64,000 bases of DNA from Fimbriosthenelais zetlandica (Eukaryota): the NCBI GenBank assembly GCA_977030845.1, contig OZ365115.1, positions 8,804,001 to 8,868,000 of the forward strand, written 5' to 3'. The notes beneath the pieces were generated by a model. The model searched no databases, was not told the DNA's origin, and saw only the letters and a list, made by a program, of their open reading frames with translations. Made by a program: the position numbers and the translations under genes. This document shows, one piece after another, positions 41,070 to 63,885 of this stretch (positions are counted from its first letter, which is position 1; every line of letters starts with the position of its first letter).

Positions 41070-42647
41070 TCAAAGAAGCAGGAACGGATCCAGTAGTGAC
41101 TAAAAGACAACAAAAATATGCAGGGATGGGAGTGGGTCGGGGGTGGCGGCCCCAGAAGCTATCGGGGCCACATGGGATATTCTATCTGTAAGCGATGCTG
41201 TTTTTTCTTTTCTATGACACAGGTAGCCTAAACTAGTTCGTTTATCGGAGATTGGAAACTATTGTTGAGAGCAACTGACAAAGTGGTAGTGGTATGTGTA
41301 ACAAGAATATAGGGCACATTTAGGGCCCAACAAGCTTCGCTGATAAGCATATAATAGATTCTCCTCCCGGCCCATCCAGGCCAGGGGAGGATCCAGACTG
41401 TTATATAGCCTATAGGCTACATAGTAGGTGGTTTGTCGGACCTTGTGGATATAAGAAATTATTATTTGAACAACAACTCTTCCCTGAAGGGGGAGGGGTG
41501 GATGCATGGGTGCGGGGGAGGGGGTGTGCAAGGCCCCTGGACGCCCCCCCCCCCCCCCACCCCCACCGCCGATCCACCCCGCCTAACCCCCTACGGGTAC
41601 CCCACTTTTCACCCCTCCTCCCTAGCCATCTTCATCCCAACCCTATATCACGTCTAAGGCCTTCTCTATGACGAATCAACCAAAACAAGTGGATACCATG
41701 AAAATCACGTGCGTAGCCTACGATGTGTGTCATCTTTTCCAGCAAGTGCTGGAGAGGACTGCAGATAGAATAAAGCTCCTGTGATTTTGTATATAGACTA
41801 GCCCAGCCTACTTCCCCGAATCCTGTAATGCAGACATTATAGCTTTGTATACTGAGAAAACAAAAAGGTAAGGTAGGTATAGCCTACGAAGAACGTTGGA
41901 AGATCTGTGAAAGTGCGCATGGGGTATTAAATGCAAGGGTCATACATTTGGTAAGATTCCCTATAGTAGACGCTTCTGACACCCTATAGATTCTCTATAG
42001 GCATAAGGGCTATTTAGGTCTAGGCCTTTCTTTTTATAATTAAAAACTTGGTGGGGATTGGGGGTGGGGGAGTGCTTGTAGGCCTATAAGAAAGGCTGAT
42101 AAATGAAGTGTCAAAATTAAACCAATATTTAGGCCTATAGGTGCAAAAGGTAAAGCAAGGTAGCCTATGAAATAGGCTACATGAGGATTACCGGTAATCA
42201 TAACGTCGGAATTAGAAGAAATTTACCGGTAGATCGCGTAAACACAGTTTATCTTCTAGCCGCTAGGCCTACTATAGGCGCTAGTCTATAGGCCTAGGCT
42301 TTTCTCACCCGTCGCCGTTTTGGACCATTACAAGGCTAACAAGCATTCATACGGCAATGCTCATTGCCGAAACGAAAAGAAATCTTAGTCAGTATCTTCT
42401 AGAATTCATTAATTTAGGTTTGTTGGGAGTTTTTGCCGCAGTGAGGGCGAGGAAGGAGATGTGGGCCTACGGTAGATGGCGGGTAGGGCGTGCACTGTGT
42501 CCGAGCATAGGACTGGTCCGAGGTGGCCGGGACGGACGACATTGAACCATATTTAACAAATAAAATGACTTACATTATCATCCACCATCCAGACTTGGCT
42601 CTTTGAGTCTCTTCTTTTTCAGAATGTTTGCATCTCGTTTGTTCCAT
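41070..42647 (-). CDS. Candidate small three-exon orphan gene, 77 aa (exons 42647-42574, 41851-41722, 41099-41070)
   Basis: gtaagt donor, ttttctcag and tcttttag acceptors, matching phases 2 and 0, AATAAA at 41003-40998. No recognisable homology; it could be non-coding. Confidence 0.3.
41494..41580. mobile_element. Degenerate short inverted-repeat element (GGGGTGGATC-type ends)
   Basis: aggggtggatgc ... gatccacccc ends; related ends occur at 43044-43058 and 61999-62198. Confidence 0.45.
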
Positions 42648-44526: not shown

Positions 44527-47106
44527 CTGGAATTAAATGAAAATAATATAATAGCATTAGGTCTGACCATCCGATAGATTAGGTTATGAATTGAGTGAGA
44601 CCACATAATTCCAATCCCCATGTTTGTTTCAACGGGCACCATTCTATTGAATGGATGAATCAGATGGGTCCAAAAACGGGTCATGTGACCTGGTACAATA
44701 ACGAGGATTAACACTGATCACTCTGAGTTGAATATTTTCCGAAATTCATATTAATTTGTACAAAGGAAATATTCATGGTATAATCATTGATGTACCAAAT
44801 TGAACTTCTGATTCTTACCTGAAGCCAGACTACTGTTGTCACCACGATAAAGTGTGTTGTTGAAAGACTCTTGGACGTTGCTGCTGGTATTGAAGGTTGT
44901 AGTTATGTTCATTTCTTCAGGTTCATCTGCTACATTAGAATCTGTAAAAGAGAATAAAGTACTCAGGGATATGCCCTCATATTTGTCATGAAAATCATGA
45001 AACAATCAGCAGAATCTTCAAACGGCGAGTGCAGAGAGAATTAAAATTAATCATTTTTAGAAAGCTGGACATACCATTGCAGATTTCACTAATAGGTATG
45101 TCTTGCCAATTTCGATTCACAAATGCTCTTGGTGAAGCACAAGGCTGGTCAGAGAGTTTGAAACTGACTTTGTGACTACTTTTCAGTAGAGTAATATTAC
45201 TGAAATACCAGCAAATCGCCGCTTTGGTGCAGTTAAGCGGATTTGTCCTGATGTCCACCTCAAGAGTTCTGGCTCCTGTTGGGAAAGTGTCATATCCAAA
45301 CATTGTGATTTGGTTCTCCTTTAGTCCTAATATCCGAAACTTGCTCATGCTTGTACGGGCCTCAAAGGGGAATGTAATAAGTTGATTACTTTGCAGATTC
45401 AATATTCGAAGGGATGTCATTAGGGCCATTGTTTCTGCAGGAATGAAGGTTAACTCATTGAAAGACATATCTAAATTTTGTATTCCTGATTGATGAATTT
45501 CAGGGAAGGTCCTCAGCTTGTTCCTTGCCAGGTTCACATCTGTCAGAACAGTCATGTTAGACAATTCATCAGCAGCAATATAATCTATCTGATTGCTATG
45601 CACCTCGAGGATTTGCAATTGAGTCTTGACATAAGACAAGCAAGGCAGTCGGGTGAGATAATTGTTATTCACTTTAAGCGTCTGCAGCTTGGTCATGCAC
45701 ATCATTGACTCACATGGGAAGGAAGTGATATTGTTGATATCCGCTTTTAGTGTAGTAATACTTGTCTCTTGTTCTTCGTTTGCCTTGTTACAATGGCAAT
45801 TACTTCGGTTCATCACTTCATTGCAAGTGGCAGTTTCTATCTCGTTATCGGTAAAAACTAATGTCCTCAGGGTTCTCGCTGAACATCCCAAATCAGTTGG
45901 TAGCTTAGTATGATGTAAATCAGCAATATATAATGTCTTTAGCCTGCAAGTTGACGCTAAATAGCCATTTGGAATTGGGCCTAACTTATGGTTATGGCTA
46001 ATGATAAGTGTTGCCAGTCGGTGGAGATGGGATATGTTTGGGTAGGATTGAAGGTCGTTAAATTCAGCGTTGATGGATGAAAGATTCACAGCAGCTGCTA
46101 TCTTTCCATATTCTATTTGTGTGAGGTCATTTTTGCGGACATTAACATATCGCAGTTGAGGAATGATAGGTCCAATATTAGGAAAACTTGTCAGTTTAGT
46201 CTCAGACACCTGAAGGTATTCCAGACGTGGCAACGTGGATAGAATTTCATCCGCGATTTCCCTGTTTGGATTGTTTAAGTTCTTCCCCAGTTGAATATAT
46301 TTCAGTGATGGGAAGGTTCTATTTACTACGTACTGAAGATCTGAAAGGTTCCTTTTCCATGCACCCCAAAGATATAATCCCTCCAGTCTGCTAAAGATGG
46401 TGAGGAAGCCTGGAGTGAACTCCTGTATTGGTGTGTTAAATACGTCAAGGCGCAGCAGTGTTCTATTGAGTAAATCCAAGTTAGGAAGTTCAGTCATTTG
46501 CTTGTTTTCACCCATGTGCAAGTATTCGATATTGAGGCCTTCAAAGTAGTCACTTGGAAAGGATGTTGCATTGATATCTCCCACGCCATTCATTTTTAGT
46601 TCTATTAAATTACTCAGTCCGTTTAATGTTGGTAATGGCAGAATCAGGGGATTATAATCGAGTGTTATGAGTTGAAGGTTTGGAAAATGTGTGAAAATAT
46701 CCCTGGGAATCACTTTCAAGTTGTTTGAATGCAAAGTGATGTTAGTCAAAAGAAGGGAACAATTTTGTGAGCAAAGCTGTGGAAGTGTCTCTAACCGTGG
46801 GTTTTCGTTTATGGCGAGGAACTTTAATTCTAGAAATCCTTCGAAGACGTATTCATCTATAGTTGTAAATTCTGAGTTGGCTGTTGCCTTAAATGTCTCC
46901 ACTATTGTGGAATAACGATTAATTTGAGCTGATAATAGGTGGGTCAGATCTGTACTTTGATAAAGCAATTCTGATCCCAATCTAAGATCTGAGATGTCAT
47001 CAGCACCTTCAGAAGGAACTTTGATCTTGCGTGTGTGCGATGGAAAAACTAACAATAGAATAAGATATATATACAACGAAAACTTAATATTGTTTATCTT
47101 GGCCAT
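44288..47106 (-). CDS. Secreted leucine-rich-repeat protein with LRRCT cap and C-terminal PAN/apple domain (797 aa, 3 exons)
   Basis: Exons 47106-45075, 44941-44819 and 44526-44288, all joined in phase 1 (2394 nt). Signal peptide MAKINNIKFSLYIYLILLLVFPSHT, many LxxLxLxxN repeats, NPLNC...CW...PCASP...IC cap, PAN-type CIYACKHDPSC...CMLY. No transmembrane segment. Confidence 0.85.
44819..44941 (-). CDS. LRR-PAN gene exon 2: Asn/Thr/Ser-rich linker
   Basis: ctcttttacag acceptor, cag|gtaaga donor, phase 1-1, several N-glycosylation sequons. Confidence 0.8.
45075..47106 (-). CDS. LRR-PAN gene exon 1: signal peptide, LRR array and LRRCT
   Basis: Lies within the 747-aa ORF. Met45 of that ORF begins the signal peptide; aatg|gtatgt donor at 45074. 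Confidence 0.9.
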
Positions 47107-47273
47107 TTGAATGGCAATATGATTCCAGATGAATAAAAGTCTTCTTTTTTTCCAGTTTCCTTGTCCCTGCACTACTCCTGTTAAGTCAGTCCGAGATCTG
47201 GAAAATGGAGGAGAGAGAAGACCGTCCAGCACAATCAATTGGTGAGTCTCTTACTGTTTGTGAGTTTCCTATA

Positions 47274-50072: not shown

Positions 50073-51284
50073 CAGAATGTCAGGCCAAACAGATGTTCTT
50101 AGAGGCTGAACTCTCAAAACAATTTCTAAGCTTCGGTATGATCTTCCGATCCCATTGCAAAAAAATGGAATAGAGCAACTGAAAATCTGTTCCTTATTGT
50201 CTATTCCTTATATTTATCTGTTCCATAGTTTTTTCTAAGTTTTTGCCAAAATTTCGTGGAATGTGAGAGCTTGAACTGAGAGATTTTTGAAACCATTGTC
50301 CCTATTTATATACCATTGTTATGCCAGACTAACCACAGTATTTTTGCCAATAGGCAGATTGTTATTATAAAAAATAATTCGATGTTATGGCCAATACCAG
50401 TAGCTTGGAATATTCCCTAATATACATTTCATATCGGTACATTGTTTATACTTTTAAATAACATTATATCCTATAGTTTTTTACAACGAAAATGTTTCGT
50501 GAATGGATAGTCTAGGACAGATTTTACTTATTATTTATGATTGAGTTTAAAGTCACTCTTCATATTTCATATATCCATCATATCAAGGAGAACCTTTAGA
50601 GATCTTTAAGCCAGTCGTTTACAGCATCATATTATATGATTATGCAATCTATCATTTTTGACAACTCTTGTTCACTACACTGAGATTTTGAGTTCATATG
50701 CGGGCAAAAGGCATCCCGTTGAACCTGTTTCATATTAACTCCTACTGTTTTGAGACTATAAAGGCGCTAAATCTTGGGTATCCAAGAGGCACAGATTTTC
50801 AGAATATCCCGGTACATGTACATCCAAGTACACTGTTAAAAATAGAAAACCCATCCATTTACCCATATTGACACCCTGCCCTCCCTCCCTGCCCCTCTCC
50901 CTCCATCTCTCTCCCCCTCCCTCTCTATCCAAATCCCACCCTCTCCCACTCCCTCCCTCTCCCCCTGACTCTCCGCCAGTTCCCATGCCGACTATCTATC
51001 CAGTAAGGAAGTGCCCCCCTCCACTTCCCTCACACTTAGAAGGGATAGTCGTAGCCCATGGTGACTAGCTCTTTCATTATCGCCTAGTGTTCCATCCGAC
51101 ATGCTCCTACAGATTATATTTCCTAGAGACATCAGCTGACAACGATATAAGCTGGGAATATAATAGTTTTAAACCTACAGATTTATATTAGGACACGCGA
51201 GTTTTACACCGGGATATCTTTTGGCGTCCTCGGATTTTCTTGAGCAGAACTTTCTGGAATATAGTGAAATCATAACTTTTGAAG

Positions 51285-51372
51285 ATGGAGAAATTCTTCG
51301 TGGCAGGATTTTTATTTCTCGCATATGTGACATACACTGTGGATAGTCGGCCAGTGGTATCTGACTCTATAG
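51285..51372 (+). CDS. Precursor exon 1: signal peptide (MEKFFVAGFLFLAYVTYTVDS|RPVVSDSI)
   Basis: Hydrophobic core, strong Kozak context and strong donor; too short for the ORF track. Confidence 0.83.
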
Positions 51373-52832
51373 GTAAGTAGTTTTATTTTACCTTGACTCA
51401 GCAAATAGTAAGGGTGGGGAAAGTGTACTTGTATAATATTCCTTTCACTCACCCGACTTCATTCATAAACACGATCAGCTGGTCTACCGGCAGAACTGAC
51501 TCCAGCCTCAGCCAGCTGATAGTTCAGATAAACCATGCTGGAAAGTGGAATGTTCTCATACCACATTACCACAAACATCTAGTGAACCGATTAAACACTG
51601 GCCAAAATAATTTAAGGTATTATCTAATAATTGTTTAATGTGCAGTGGTAGAAAAATAATAGATACAATAACTAATTTCCATTATTTTTGCTACCTATAT
51701 TTTTGTTTTAAATAACTCAACTGGCAAGTACTTTCTATTTACTATCATTTTCACTGTCCAGAAATTCTAAAAGTTTAATGAAATATCCGACAGATTATGC
51801 TTTACTTTTGAAGGTTTAATTTCGTGTAAACTTTTCTATACATTTAACCCCATGGATATTTTGCTAAGTGATACCAGTATACAATGGCAGTTTCTAATCA
51901 TGACCTGGTAATCCTTTTATTGAGAAATTGGTTATTTAGAAAAATAAAGAGGGTAGGAATCAAATATAAGCCTAGAAAGTTATTCTGTCTGACTTTTGGC
52001 CGTTTGTCTGCTGTCTGCTCCCTGACTAAGATCCTGTAGGAGGCAAAGGCAAGGGTCTTGGCCCTCATATATGCAAATCTATGCAGATGAACAGGGAGCC
52101 CAGAGACAGGCAGCCTTCCAATGTGTTATTCCTATAATCTGTCTAACCACAAGCATTCCAACTGGTCGCAATTACATTATGTGGCGCGGCGCATGTACAT
52201 CCGTGCACCCTGAAAACCAATCAGTAATGAACTTACCAATGAGAATTAGGCCAATATTATAGTCGAGAACATATTAAATTATTTATACTATGTTAATTGG
52301 GCCTAGATATTTATTTTAAAAATATTATTTCACATAAAGAATTTATTAAACATCTTGTGGCAACAAAATTAGAATTAGTGCAAATCACAAGCCAAACGTG
52401 ATTTCTCTTTTGGTTTATCTTTAATGTTCTAAAAGTAATACAAATGTATATATATCCTTTAAGAGACTTTAGGCTATGTCTAAACTCCATCAGCAGCATT
52501 GCATAGTCTATTCAGAAACTTTTTATCACAGATTTAGCGATAGAAATGCAATAAAGCTTAAAGGCAGCACTATTCATAGAACGTCCTGATCTTTTCCAGA
52601 CAATCTAGGGCACGAGGTGGAAACAGAGAAGCTTATGGCCGTCATCAGACATGCGCTACGAGAACGACGAGGGCTACTTCCGGTTTTAGATGGCATTGTG
52701 AGGCGGGGGAGTGATGATGAAGAAGACGAGACTGTAGAAGAGCTTTCAATAGAAAGACAAGCCATTCACAGAAGAGATCGACTACAATCATTTGCAGATC
52801 GCGGTGGATGGGGAGGAGGTTACGGACGTTAA
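51285..52832 (+). CDS. Neuropeptide-type prohormone precursor, 106 aa, 2 coding exons; C-terminal amidated peptide DRLQSFADRGGWGGGY-NH2
   Basis: Exon 51285-51372 (aagATGG start, signal peptide, g|gtaagt) joins in phase 1 to exon 52600-52832 (cttttccag). The protein has RERR, RR and RR sites, an acidic spacer and a terminal Y-G-R-stop. Confidence 0.85.
52600..52832 (+). CDS. Precursor exon 2: cleavage sites, acidic spacer and amidated peptide
   Basis: Contains the 52617-52832 ORF; acceptor at 52598-52599. Confidence 0.85.
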
Positions 52833-55800
52833 TTTAAACCTTTCCATGCGGCAAGAGTTTCCACATACTATATGTCTCCCAAAGGTGGCAAGATTGTGAC
52901 ATTACTGCATAAAAGGCGGCACATTTTGACAGTTTTGGAATTTATTCTATTTTGAATAGAAATGAATATTTAAATTTAGAACTAACAAGTATTCATTACA
53001 AATATATTTCAACAAAATAATAGTCTAGCCGTAATCTCTTTTTTTGTTCAATTTTTGGATGGAAAATTTTATTGGGATCCAAATGTAATGATAAACCTGC
53101 AACATGTGTCTCAAAAACCTTAAGTTGGGGATGAAGTACCACCGAAATCAACAGGAAGAATCCACGATTAATCGATCTCAGAACAAGGGGCAATGGAAAG
53201 AATAAAAAACCTCGAATGTATATGGATTTTGACTGTATTCTCCCTATCCTAGGTCTTATCAAAATACCTTGAGGATTCCCTATGCGACGTAGGGACAAAG
53301 TGATTATTTTGAAGGGTACATAGATAGGCTTGGACCTAGTGAGGTGGTTTATTATTTTGTAGTAGATCAAAAAGGAAATATATTGTTAGAATTATCAGAG
53401 AGGATGGAGAGTCAAAGTGAAAACACATCCTCAAAATATGAATATTTTCATCAAATAACATTCCGAGAGGAGGAAGTTTATGTACGTTGAAAATACATTG
53501 AGAATAATATTAACTAATATCCAACATCTAAAGTGGTATAACAAGTAGAGGGAACTGTTTTATAATGAATATTAGCAATGCTATTGAATCGATAGCTAAT
53601 ATTCGTTTTGAAACAGGCTCCAGATCTCTTCCTGCATGAGCACTTTCTTATAGTTTCATTATTGCATATTCTTAAAGACAATGTACACTGTATGAAAAGA
53701 GCACCTAAAGACCTTGTTGTCCAGCATAATTGTGATCTTATAATGACAATCTCAAAAGATATGTGTACATGCTGAAGTATTCTGAAAAACGTGAATCTGA
53801 ATCTGAATCTCTTCTTGGTGTTTTTGATTGCGAAAGGATGGATTGAAACAGTTTGAACCACTTATAAGCTGAGGGTTCTTATAGGAGCCCTGGTGTGAAA
53901 GGGAATATGTTAAACTTTGTGATAATATATTTATTCCTATTTAAGAGTAACAGTTTGAAAGTATACTAGCGCTATTAATGTGTTATTGTAAAACTGCTGG
54001 TATTTATCTGTTAAAGTTTTACGCCAACGGACACGGATTTATATATAGATTTACTATATGTATGCGTATAATGTGCCTTGGCGGGCTTCACTGAGATGAA
54101 GATGGAACATTCTGTTTAGACAGTTGTAATTCTCATACTAGAAGGTGTCATTCCTCTAGATGGAAACATCTTATAAAAGATGCCATCTATGACAGGCAGA
54201 TGGTTTAATGCTATTATAACGGTAAAACAGGGTAGGTAAGACAGGGGTTGACATTATAACGACACCCCACTGCGACTATTCCACAGATTAAATAACTTAA
54301 AACTACTTCAAATAAACTAACTTCGTATCGGCAATTGTTCTTTATTTAATCTTTATTACTTATGAAAATAAAGTCCGGTCCGCATTTCCTTAGAAGGGCT
54401 TTTAATGGTATTATTTTGCATAAAAAATTATGTCTTGTTTATATAATATATAATATAGAAACATCGCAATCCAACACGATTTAGAATCAAATTAATATCA
54501 AAATGGCATTTCCATTATACTATGGATGTTTAAATAACAAGGTATTACATAAATCCTAAAGTCATATCAGTCTGGAATGATATTGCAATTTATTATCCGC
54601 TTCCAGGTTTCGTAGTTGTACTTAGCCCTGTGACATCCGTACTTGACAGCCATATCCTTGACCTCTAATTGCACTTATGACAATCAACCCTCGAACTACC
54701 TGGTTGTTTCATTCCCGAGCAATCCTATAGATTTGTCAATCCCACCTTATACCCTGTAGACACCGGTAAACGTCGAGGCCAAAGTCCCAAGTTCCAAGGT
54801 TAAAATGATCAGTCCCACATTTATCGTCATGATAGACTGAATTGTCAACAGACACCAAGTGGGCCAGGTCAATATTGATAAAGTGGATTAAGCTTGCACA
54901 TTGACAGACAGAGGTAGACTTACAATTGTATAGGGTTCCAAGAATTTTGGGGTTAAATGTTGGGCATTGACATTCAATGGCATGCCTTGCGCTGGTTAAA
55001 CTAAAAGAGGGATTTTAATTTATTCGCCTTTTTTCTTCCTGATACTAGATACGATCAAATTTAAAGGGAGTTCCTGACAATCATTCTCGATGATAAATAT
55101 GATAATTATACCACAACAATGCAATTAAGATAAATTTACAATAATACATAGGGATGGTTTATGATTTATACTTTTTCCATATAGGGGATGTCCATAAATA
55201 TTTTTTCCTGCGCACCTGCAGAAAGGTGCAGAAATTTGCATGGACACCTGCAGTTGATAACATCTATATTATAGGTCCAAATAATGTAATACTGCTAATG
55301 ATATTATGTTCATTAAGAACATACTCCATGGTTATAATTATACACTCACCCCTTGTCTGATTTCAACCCATGGAATGTACCGGACACACCCTTTATCTCC
55401 AACTGGAAACGAACAACCAATCAAATTGAATTTCATGTAGAGAAACACGTAGTATCCAGAAGAACACGCGACACCGTGTTTATCATGATATTTGGGGCAA
55501 ATGTTTCAAATGTTTCAGTCTTATTTTAGCCTCATTTAGCAAGTAAGCAACTGTTACAGCCCATTGATGATAGGTTAATTGCGATAAAGTTTGCTTTTAC
55601 TCTTCCTTCCTTAAAATGTGAACAATACGTTTCCCAACTCATGACCAATCGTCCCAATGCATGCACACCTCGAACACACACCAACATCATGAAGTGGAAG
55701 AAGGGGATATGCATTTTCATTCTCCAATATGAACAAAATTAATGATTAAAAATCTTCTATAAACATCTGACAGCCAATTATTCATAACTAGCTTTATAAT

Positions 55801-62198: not shown

Positions 62199-63885
62199 GT
62201 AATATTGAACCTTTTCAGTGGAAAAAATATTAATTCTCCTTTCTGGGATATTAGAATCATGAGGGCATTTGACAATTGATCACAAGTCTATTTTATTTGT
62301 AATTCACATTCGGATCCCAGTTCTTCGGAGCTGAATACCGCGGGCTGAATGAAACACAATCAAACCAGAGAATGATACAATAGTTGGCAATGAAGTAAAC
62401 CATTCAGGCTGCTGCAGTCCATGTTCTCCTTTACAAATGAACCATCTGCAGTAAGTGTGCTACTTTGTATGAGGCCATGGGTTATCCGGCAAAATCTTGC
62501 CATTGACATAAATGCTGCGGTAGTAATTATTGACAATTTAGCCCAGAATACATTGCACTCTATCCTGTCAAATACAATGTCATATTTCGCAGCCTTGTCT
62601 TGATTTCTTTTTCTTACGGCTGCATGAAATTATACTTGTAGTACTGTAGGATGGGTTATAAACGATGCCTATTTCCATCGAAACTCCATACAAATTTATG
62701 TACGTATATATGTACGGATATAGTCCTCCTTTAGGCCTTATAACTCATTTTGAGTTTGGTATCATCCTTTCGGCTCTTGGCCAAGAAATCAAATATATGT
62801 TTAAATTGCATTTATTCTCAGTGCTATAGATTCAGAATTCTGATTTATGTGGAAGTAGAGTCTGATTCAGCTTGGGGCTGAGGTCCAGACGTTGTTTGTC
62901 CACGGGCACGTGTCAACTTCTGTCTTACATATTCTAGTAAAACATTACTCATATGAACACCTCCTATCAGCATGCATGTCCTAGTTCTTCTTTCTCTTTT
63001 TCTTTATCGTCCGGTATAATGTATATATTATACTATACTTCTTTTTTTCAGGGACCATTTAATGGCCAGTCTCCCATATGCATGGTATATGGGGAATTAC
63101 CTGGTTTGATGGATATAAACTATCCCTTCCATTCATGGTTCGGAAGACGTGGTTCTTTCGGACCCACAGATCCCCCTTTTCTACGGACCAACACGAAATA
63201 TTCCGATGCCTGCTGCAGAACCTGTGAGTAGTATAAAACTTAGTTATATATATGCAAGTTATATAATATATAGAATGCCTTTTCAAAAACCCGTAATATT
63301 AATTTAGACTTTTACAAGGTTTGAAAGGAAAAGCACTTGTTGGCAATTGTGGACCTGGAAAACTGCCTCAAAAAGTTTGCCTTGGTCTGTCTCGAGAGGC
63401 ACCTTGATATGTCTCTATACTTTGGTGTAAGAGGATGCACCGTATAGCTTACCTGTGGGCGACCCATCCTTTATACCCTGTGATTTATCAAGTATATAAT
63501 TTACAATGACACGATTGGACGTCTTACAAGTGCTCATGGAACATTCGGGAAGGATACTGCCTAATCAAGTCCTCCCAAAATAAGAGAAAAGCTCCCTTGG
63601 GGGCATGGGCATTAACTCCCAATAGTTTGAGCATGAGAATGTGCGCATTGACACCTCGTCATGGTGTGTGGTGGGTGGGGGTGGGGGGATTCTCAACATC
63701 CACAGACCAATAGATGTTTGCCCCCCCCCCCACCCCCTGCTCCTCCACTTCTCCCTCCTCCTCACAAACATCTTTAACGTGGGATGCAGTGCGCATAAAA
63801 CTGCGCATGTGCGTTGCCTGGTGAAGTCTCGGAGTAGGTGGGGAACCAAGGGAGAAGCTCGGGAGAGAGGAACGGCGAGTGAGAA

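What the first reader, a model, noticed from the sequence alone, without database searches (positions are those of the whole stretch)
51285..52832. Unrecognised neuropeptide precursor yielding an amidated Gly/Trp-rich peptide (DRLQSFADRGGWGGGY-NH2)
Spliced protein: MEKFFVAGFLFLAYVTYTVDS|RPVVSDSIDNLGHEVETEKLMAVIRHAL-RERR-GLLPVLDGIV-RR-GSDDEEDETVEELSIERQAIH-RR-DRLQSFADRGGWGGGY-G-R*. It has a signal peptide, convertase sites, an acidic spacer and a terminal Gly-Arg amidation signal, the standard prohormone layout. Predicted products are the 16-mer amide (or GGWGGGY-NH2 after monobasic cleavage) and GLLPVLDGIV. There are faint echoes of CCK/sulfakinin (DR..GW, GGG + aromatic amide) and GnRH (GWxxG), but it lacks the sulfation Tyr and other defining residues. 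It may be a new or highly diverged signalling system.
Basis: partly seen in the sequence, partly recalled or inferred. Interest (0 to 1): 0.85.

Follow-up and report, generated by a model that had tools for sequence, protein, structure and literature searches.

The report
Annelid GYamide neuropeptide precursor gene
The two-exon gene is real and almost certainly makes a small amidated signalling peptide, but it belongs to the "GYamide" neuropeptide family already catalogued in 2013 in the ragworm Platynereis, so it is a new member of an obscure known family and not a new signalling system.

Summary
Exon 1 (51285-51372) and exon 2 (52600-52832) join through a consensus GT..AG intron into a 106-aa protein with a signal peptide, RERR/RR/RR sites and a C-terminal ...GGWGGGY-G-R-stop.

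It is not unrecognised. Conzelmann et al. 2013 (PMC3890597) list a Platynereis dumerilii proneuropeptide called GYamide, which ends ...KR-NFDRNGWGGGY-GKK. They detected NFDRNGWGGGY-amide by mass spectrometry. The window peptide ends ...FADRGGWGGGY-GR, 9 of 11 residues identical over DRxGWGGGYG+basic, at the same extreme C-terminal position and as a single copy. GWGGGYG[KR] occurs once in the six-frame window, against an expectation of 2e-6.

By eye, the two precursors are also colinear upstream. An RP-x5-ID motif follows the signal cleavage site, and its ID spans the proposed splice junction.

The 2013 paper found no orthologue of GYamide outside Platynereis. This copy therefore extends an orphan family whose receptor and function are, as far as I could find, undescribed.

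The CCK/sulfakinin echo is real but thin: the match is only the GWGGG core of annelid sulfakinin, and the family's defining (D/E)Y and F-amide are absent.

No database homologue and no RNA run could be obtained, so the junction, the expression site and the processing remain inferred.

Verdict: real gene, new member of a known kind, modest interest.

The parts
51146..51151 (+). TATAAG, a candidate TATA box 139 nt upstream of the ATG (inferred only)
   Evidence: Read. There is no transcript data.
51285..51347 (+). Start codon and predicted signal peptide MEKFFVAGFLFLAYVTYTVDS, with V at -3 and S at -1
   Evidence: The 11-residue Kyte-Doolittle mean peaks at 2.39 over residues 5-15. The cleavage site follows the -3/-1 rule but was not checked with SignalP.
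51348..51372 (+). End of exon 1: propeptide RPVVSDSI plus the first base of the Asp30 codon
   Evidence: By eye, RP-x5-ID matches Platynereis GYamide (RPLDEYLID; sequence).
51373..52599 (+). Intron of 1227 nt, phase 1, GTAAGT...TTTTCCAG
   Evidence: The donor matches AG|GTAAGT at 8 of 8 positions. No RNA evidence was available.
52600..52658 (+). Start of exon 2: (D)NLGHEVETEKLMAVIRHAL, the N-terminal propeptide region
52659..52706 (+). RERR - GLLPVLDGIV - RR: basic sites flanking a 10-mer that is probably a spacer peptide
   Evidence: By eye, the Platynereis counterpart LIPSEDG lacks flanking basic sites.
52707..52769 (+). Acidic spacer GSDDEEDETVEELSIERQAIH
52770..52775 (+). Dibasic RR, the predicted convertase site that releases the C-terminal peptide
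   Evidence: It is the positional equivalent of KR in Platynereis GYamide.
52776..52823 (+). Predicted mature peptide DRLQSFADRGGWGGGY, amidated; monoisotopic M 1739.813
   Evidence: It is 9/11 identical to Platynereis DRNGWGGGYGK.
52824..52832 (+). Gly (amide donor), Arg (removed by carboxypeptidase), TAA stop
   Evidence: YG[KR][KR*] occurs three times in the six-frame window; this is the only one on a GWGGG core.
53201..53206 (+). First canonical AATAAA downstream, 369 nt after the stop; a candidate poly(A) signal (inferred)

Best explanation
This is an intact two-exon gene for a GYamide-family proneuropeptide. It is the counterpart of the Platynereis dumerilii GYamide (GYa) precursor, in what appears to be another annelid.

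The proposed mechanism is inferred from the sequence layout and from the Platynereis peptide. The 21-residue signal peptide is removed. A prohormone convertase cuts after Arg87-Arg88. Carboxypeptidase removes the terminal Arg106. Peptidylglycine alpha-amidating monooxygenase converts Gly105 into the amide, giving DRLQSFADRGGWGGGY-NH2. If the RRDR stretch is used as the cleavage site instead, the product would be LQSFADRGGWGGGY-NH2.

The conserved core is F-x(0,1)-D-R-x-G-W-G-G-G-Y-NH2. The peptide is expected to act as a secreted neuropeptide or hormone on a receptor that has not been identified, most likely a GPCR.
For: Gene model:
- The ORF and splice sites are exactly as stated.
- Exon 1 is the unique best candidate upstream.

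Match to Platynereis GYamide:
- The Platynereis precursor (138 aa) ends GSKR-NFDRNGWGGGY-GKK (PMC3890597 Additional files 7 and 8).
- The window ends HRR-DRLQSFADRGGWGGGY-GR-stop.
- BLASTP gives DRGGWGGGYGR against DRNGWGGGYGK, 9/11 identical, 23.5 bits.
- Both precursors have one peptide copy, at the extreme C-terminus, after a dibasic site, followed by Gly plus basic residue(s).
- GWGGGYG[KR] is expected 2e-6 times per window and is seen once.
- Among the 104 Platynereis pNP sequences, 'GGYG' occurs only in GYamide, and 'WGGG' only in GYamide and sulfakinin-1.

Evidence from Platynereis that the family is real:
- The amidated peptide was detected by mass spectrometry (mass check).
- The paper counts GYa as a bona fide pNP on that mass-spectrometry evidence.
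- Platynereis GYamide RNA is absent in egg to 36 h, appears at 48 h and peaks at 10-15 days, like other neuropeptide genes.

By-eye colinearity of the precursors, read and not computed: RP-x5-ID directly after the signal cleavage, with ID spanning the splice junction; then [IL]G; L[IL]PxxDG; an acidic run; a dibasic site; and the peptide.
Against: - No transcript evidence for this gene or its junction could be obtained: none was listed.
- No homologue was found in the protein databases, so orthology rests on one published sequence and a short, though highly specific, motif.
- The precursors differ in length (106 against 138 aa) and the N-terminal extension of the peptide differs.
- Neural expression has not been shown for this gene. 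In the material I read, it has not been localised in Platynereis either; only whole-animal RNA-seq and peptide extracts were used.
- The full-length alignment with the Platynereis precursor was done by eye only.
- I did not identify the species. If the window were Platynereis itself, this would be a paralogue and not an orthologue.
Confidence: 0.85

Rival explanations
1. It is a diverged paralogue of the CCK/sulfakinin family, and its peptide signals through a CCK/SK-type receptor.
For: Annelid sulfakinins carry the same GWGGG core. Platynereis has QQGAWDMDYGWGGGRF-amide and Capitella has ...WDMDYGWGGGRFGKR. The oyster CCK1 peptide has GLGGGRF-amide. BLASTP of the window peptide against the Capitella peptide aligns GWGGG 5/5. 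Both kinds of peptide end in an aromatic amide shortly after the Gly run.
Against: - The match is only five residues of low-complexity sequence (15 bits), against 9/11 to GYamide.
- The defining (D/E)Y(G) sulfation motif and the F-amide terminus (PMC6219549) are both absent.
- The precursor has one peptide copy, whereas protostome SK precursors have two.
- Platynereis has GYamide in addition to two sulfakinin genes.
Confidence: 0.1
2. It is a chance ORF or a decaying pseudogene. It has no function and resembles a prohormone by accident.
For: There is no RNA evidence, no database homologue, and no gene-like signal from the protein-atlas features.
Against: - The ORF is intact and has a perfect donor, a good acceptor and a signal peptide.
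- The eight-residue motif match to a peptide verified by mass spectrometry sits at the same position of the precursor and has an expectation of 2e-6.
- Short neuropeptide precursors routinely escape profile searches.
Confidence: 0.03
3. It is a secreted peptide with a non-neural role, for example a gland, epidermal or antimicrobial Gly-rich peptide.
For: Tissue localisation is unknown both here and, in what I read, for Platynereis GYamide. Gly/aromatic-rich secreted peptides also occur outside nervous systems.
Against: - It has a single short peptide behind a dibasic site with an amidation signal, and an acidic spacer.
- The homologue was recovered in a neuropeptide-directed peptidomics screen.
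- The homologue's developmental RNA profile parallels bona fide neuropeptides.
Confidence: 0.07

Closest known systems
Platynereis dumerilii GYamide (GYa) proneuropeptide (Conzelmann et al. 2013, BMC Genomics 14:906, PMC3890597)
   Same: Both have a signal peptide followed by RP. Both have a single bioactive peptide at the extreme C-terminus after a dibasic site. Both share the core D-R-x-G-W-G-G-G-Y followed by Gly plus basic residue(s), with F two or three residues before the DR. By eye, both have an acidic spacer and an L[IL]PxxDG segment.
   Different: The window precursor is 106 aa against 138 aa, because it lacks about 45 residues between the acidic run and the cleavage site. The cleavage site lies 5 residues further upstream, which predicts a 16-mer where Platynereis has an 11-mer. 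The core reads FADRGG where Platynereis has FDRNG. The window has extra RERR and RR sites around GLLPVLDGIV. It ends GR-stop, whereas Platynereis ends GKK-stop.
Lophotrochozoan CCK/sulfakinin peptides (Platynereis and Capitella DYGWGGGRF-amide; oyster Cragi-CCK1, PMC6219549)
   Same: Both have the GWGGG core and an amidated aromatic C-terminus, and both are secreted prohormones.
   Different: The window peptide has no (D/E)Y sulfation motif and no R-F-amide. It has one copy per precursor, not two. The peptide lies at the very end of the precursor.
GnRH/AKH/corazonin-type peptides
   Same: Only a G-W-x-x-G-like string and amidation are shared.
   Different: In those families the peptide lies directly after the signal peptide and starts with pyroglutamate (established knowledge). 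Here the peptide is at the C-terminus and has no N-terminal Gln.
Orcokinin/pedal-peptide family (NFDEIDRSGFGF-type)
   Same: Platynereis NFDRNGWG loosely recalls NFD..DRSGFG.
   Different: The resemblance is recalled from memory and was not tested. The window copy reads SFADRGGWG, which weakens it. Orcokinin and pedal-peptide precursors carry many copies, and their peptides are usually not amidated.

Membership tests
GYamide (GYa) proneuropeptide family | N-terminal signal peptide on a small precursor | tested here: met
   Hydrophobic core over residues 4-19, with V at -3 and S at -1. SignalP was not available.
GYamide (GYa) proneuropeptide family | Core peptide motif D-R-x-G-W-G-G-G-Y with an upstream Phe | tested here: met
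   BLASTP gives 9/11 identity to the Platynereis C-terminus. The motif is unique in the window and has an expectation of 2e-6.
GYamide (GYa) proneuropeptide family | Single peptide copy at the extreme C-terminus, preceded by a dibasic site and followed by Gly plus basic residue(s) and the stop | tested here: met
   HRR-...-Y-G-R-stop here against SKR-...-Y-G-K-K-stop in Platynereis.
GYamide (GYa) proneuropeptide family | The amidated peptide is actually produced | not testable with these tools
   Shown by mass spectrometry only for Platynereis. For this gene it needs LC-MS/MS.
GYamide (GYa) proneuropeptide family | Homology along the rest of the precursor | tested here: inconclusive
   Colinear motifs were seen by eye only (RP-x5-ID, [IL]G, L[IL]PxxDG, acidic run).
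CCK/sulfakinin | (D/E)-Y-(G) motif with a sulfatable Tyr | tested here: not met
   The only Tyr is the C-terminal residue, and no acidic residue precedes it. The definition is from PMC6219549.
CCK/sulfakinin | C-terminal F-amide (RF-amide in protostomes) | tested here: not met
   The peptide ends G-G-G-Y-amide.
CCK/sulfakinin | Activates a CCK/SK-type GPCR | not testable with these tools
   Needs a receptor assay.
GnRH/AKH/corazonin | pGlu-initiated peptide immediately after the signal peptide | tested here: not met
   The sequence after the signal peptide is RPVVSDS, and the amidated peptide is at the C-terminus. The definition is from established knowledge.

The most novel reading that the evidence does not exclude
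GYamide is not a Platynereis oddity. It is a conserved annelid peptide system, possibly wider among lophotrochozoans, that arose by duplication from the CCK/sulfakinin gene. It kept the GWGGG core but lost the sulfated Tyr and the RF-amide, and it signals through its own receptor, which is still orphan.
Probability: 0.15. Interest if true: 0.5.

Novelty: new member of a known kind. Interest (0 to 1): 0.3.

Why it matters
In 2013 GYamide was one of the proneuropeptides for which no orthologue could be found outside Platynereis. It was accepted as genuine only on mass-spectrometry evidence.

A second, diverged copy shows which residues are under constraint: F-x-DR-x-GWGGGY-amide, the C-terminal position and the amidation signal. 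It supports the view that the peptide is bioactive, and it gives a motif for finding more members.

The family also remains a candidate ligand for orphan annelid GPCRs, and the GWGGG core shared with annelid sulfakinin offers a testable idea about its origin.

This is a useful annotation and a small extension of a known family, not a new signalling system.

Tried and rejected
**Homologue searches that found nothing**
- Word-indexed protein search with the 76-aa exon 2 product: no candidate.
- The same search with the 80-aa stop-to-stop ORF, so that 138-aa proteins fell inside the length window: 6 candidates, none at E<=10.
- The same query restricted to the last 40 residues: no candidate. The 6 earlier candidates were therefore not GWGGGY proteins.
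- Exhaustive HMMER search against 1.84 billion representatives: 0 hits.
- ESM Atlas: best score 0.74, all fungal hypothetical proteins, meaningless.

**RNA evidence**
- Sequencing-run look-ups for RNA and for any kind of run: none listed. Read laying could therefore not be used.

**Literature**
- Full-text searches for GWGGGY, WGGGY and GYamide found no other neuropeptide report.
- Supplements of the Urechis, the nemertean/brachiopod/phoronid and the mollusc catalogues, some cut when stored, hold no GWGGGY peptide.
- The Platynereis GPCR deorphanisation paper (Cell Rep 2015) is not held, so I could not check whether GYamide was tested there.

**Inside the window**
- I looked for a tandem paralogue or a neighbouring sulfakinin gene. 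The four other GWGGG hits are poly-G tracts on the minus strand.
- The Rfam and tRNA scans were empty.

**Species identity**
- This was not established. The atlas result for the neighbouring LRR protein only says animal. 'Annelid' rests on earlier notes of this scan and on the GYamide match itself.

Full report
**Observation**

- An ATG at 51285 opens an 88-nt coding exon that ends at 51372 before TAG|GTAAGT.
- After a 1227-nt intron, the acceptor TTTTCCAG|AC at 52599/52600 opens a 233-nt exon that ends in TAA at 52830-52832.
- The junction is phase 1, and the split codon G|AC gives Asp30.
- The product is 106 aa: signal peptide MEKFFVAGFLFLAYVTYTVDS; RPVVSDSIDNLGHEVETEKLMAVIRHAL; RERR; GLLPVLDGIV; RR; the acidic spacer GSDDEEDETVEELSIERQAIH; RR; DRLQSFADRGGWGGGY; G; R; stop.

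The exon 2 frame is closed just upstream of the acceptor by TGA at 52587-52589, so an upstream exon is required. I enumerated all 23 ATG..GT segments in the 5.3 kb upstream that could join exon 2 in phase. The proposed exon is the only one with an 8/8 match to AG|GTAAGT, and it has the most hydrophobic N-terminus.

A TATAAG lies 139 nt upstream of the ATG, and the first AATAAA lies 369 nt after the stop. Both are only suggestive.

**What it is**

Earlier notes of this scan describe the genome as an annelid. That led me to the Platynereis dumerilii neuropeptide catalogue (Conzelmann et al. 2013, PMC3890597). Its Additional files 7 and 8 list a 138-aa proneuropeptide named GYamide that ends ...GSKR-NFDRNGWGGGY-GKK. 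Additional file 9 lists the peptide NFDRNGWGGGYam as detected by mass spectrometry, with mass 1240.537. My computed monoisotopic mass for the amidated peptide is 1240.537.

The window's C-terminus is ...HRR-DRLQSFADRGGWGGGY-GR-stop. BLASTP of the exon 2 product against the Platynereis C-terminal 18-mer aligns DRGGWGGGYGR with DRNGWGGGYGK, 9/11 identical.

The layout is also the same:
- one copy of the peptide;
- at the extreme C-terminus of the precursor;
- after a dibasic site;
- followed by the Gly amide donor, basic residue(s) and the stop.

The motif GWGGGYG[KR] occurs once in the six-frame translation of the 64-kb window. The expectation from composition is 2e-6, and it appeared in none of 300 Markov-1 simulated windows. 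Among the 104 Platynereis precursor sequences, 'GGYG' occurs only in GYamide, and 'WGGG' only in GYamide and sulfakinin-1.

**Colinearity seen by eye**

I compared with the sequence printed by eye. The two precursors look colinear upstream as well:
- Both start the propeptide with RP directly after the predicted signal cleavage site.
- Both have I-D exactly five residues later (RPLDEYLID against RPVVSDSID). In the window this I-D spans the splice junction, which is modest independent support for the junction.
- Then come [IL]-G, an L-[IL]-P-x-x-D-G segment (LIPSEDG against LLPVLDG) and an acidic run.

Platynereis has about 45 extra residues before its KR site. The window has extra RERR and RR sites around GLLPVLDGIV.

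**How it most likely works**

These steps are inferred from the layout and from the Platynereis peptide:
1. The signal peptide is removed.
2. A convertase cleaves after Arg87-Arg88.
3. Carboxypeptidase removes Arg106.
4. Gly105 is converted to the amide, giving DRLQSFADRGGWGGGY-NH2 (M 1739.813).

Cleavage after the RRDR stretch would instead give LQSFADRGGWGGGY-NH2 (M 1468.685).

GLLPVLDGIV is probably a spacer fragment, since its Platynereis counterpart has no flanking basic sites.

The receptor and function are unknown. In the library I could search, only the 2013 paper mentions GYa, and the Platynereis GPCR deorphanisation paper is not held.

In Platynereis the GYamide transcript is absent from egg to 36 h. 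It appears at 48 h and peaks at 10-15 days (76-85 normalised units). This profile is shared with many bona fide neuropeptide genes such as sulfakinin-1 and sCAP.

**Comparison with known families**

*GYamide.* Membership is met on every feature that sequence can test: signal peptide, core motif, position, copy number, cleavage signal and amidation signal.

- Annelid sulfakinins carry the same GWGGG core: Platynereis QQGAWDMDYGWGGGRF-amide and Capitella ...WDMDYGWGGGRFGKR.
- BLASTP aligns only those five residues.
- Schwartz et al. 2018 (PMC6219549) give the family's common features as the (D/E)Y(G) motif and a terminal F-amide. Both are absent here.
- The precursor has one peptide copy where protostome SK precursors have two.
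- Platynereis has GYamide in addition to two sulfakinin genes.

A duplication origin from sulfakinin remains a speculative possibility. I rate it at about 0.1-0.15.

*GnRH-type.* Membership fails on peptide position and on the N-terminal pyroglutamate (established knowledge).

*Orcokinin.* The resemblance (NFD..DR.G[FW]G) is from memory only, and the window's SFADRGG weakens it.

**Novelty**

[quoted passage not shown] I found no GWGGGY peptide in the held supplement text of the Urechis, the nemertean/brachiopod/phoronid or the mollusc catalogues. Some of those files were cut when stored.

The window gene is therefore a new, diverged member of a known but obscure orphan family. It is not a new signalling system. 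It shows what is conserved in the family: F-x-DR-x-GWGGGY-amide at the precursor's end.

I could not identify the species. If the window were Platynereis itself, this would be an undescribed paralogue.

**Limits**
- No database homologue was found by the word-indexed searches, by exhaustive HMMER against 1.84 billion representatives or by the ESM Atlas.
- No sequencing run was listed. The junction, the expression site and the processing are therefore untested for this gene.
- No second copy and no sulfakinin gene lie in the window. The other GWGGG hits are poly-G tracts.

**Verdict**

I score it as a new member of a known kind, interest 0.3.

Noticed in passing
window 50874-50966: A CT-rich (CCCTCC-type) imperfect microsatellite lies about 320-410 bp upstream of the GYamide start codon. 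It could be a promoter-proximal polypyrimidine tract or just a simple repeat.
   Followed up: no
window 5521-5535, 12381-12395, 41548-41562, 63721-63735 (minus strand): Long poly-G (poly-C on the plus strand) tracts translate as GWGGG and mimic the peptide core in six-frame searches. They are not coding.
   Followed up: yes
window 44995-47238 (-): A single 747-aa open reading frame holds LRR_8 and LRR_4 repeats. The atlas neighbours are animal LRR proteins. This is the secreted LRR protein that another first-reader note flagged (s1-225306).
   Followed up: partly
window 52996-53370 (-): A 124-aa TTG-initiated ORF lies antisense to the probable 3'UTR of the GYamide gene. It has no Pfam match and is most likely chance.
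   Followed up: partly
literature, not in the window: The GWGGG core of sulfakinin is identical in Platynereis and Capitella (DMDYGWGGGRF-amide) and recurs in GYamide. Molluscs have GLGGG in the corresponding place.
   Followed up: partly
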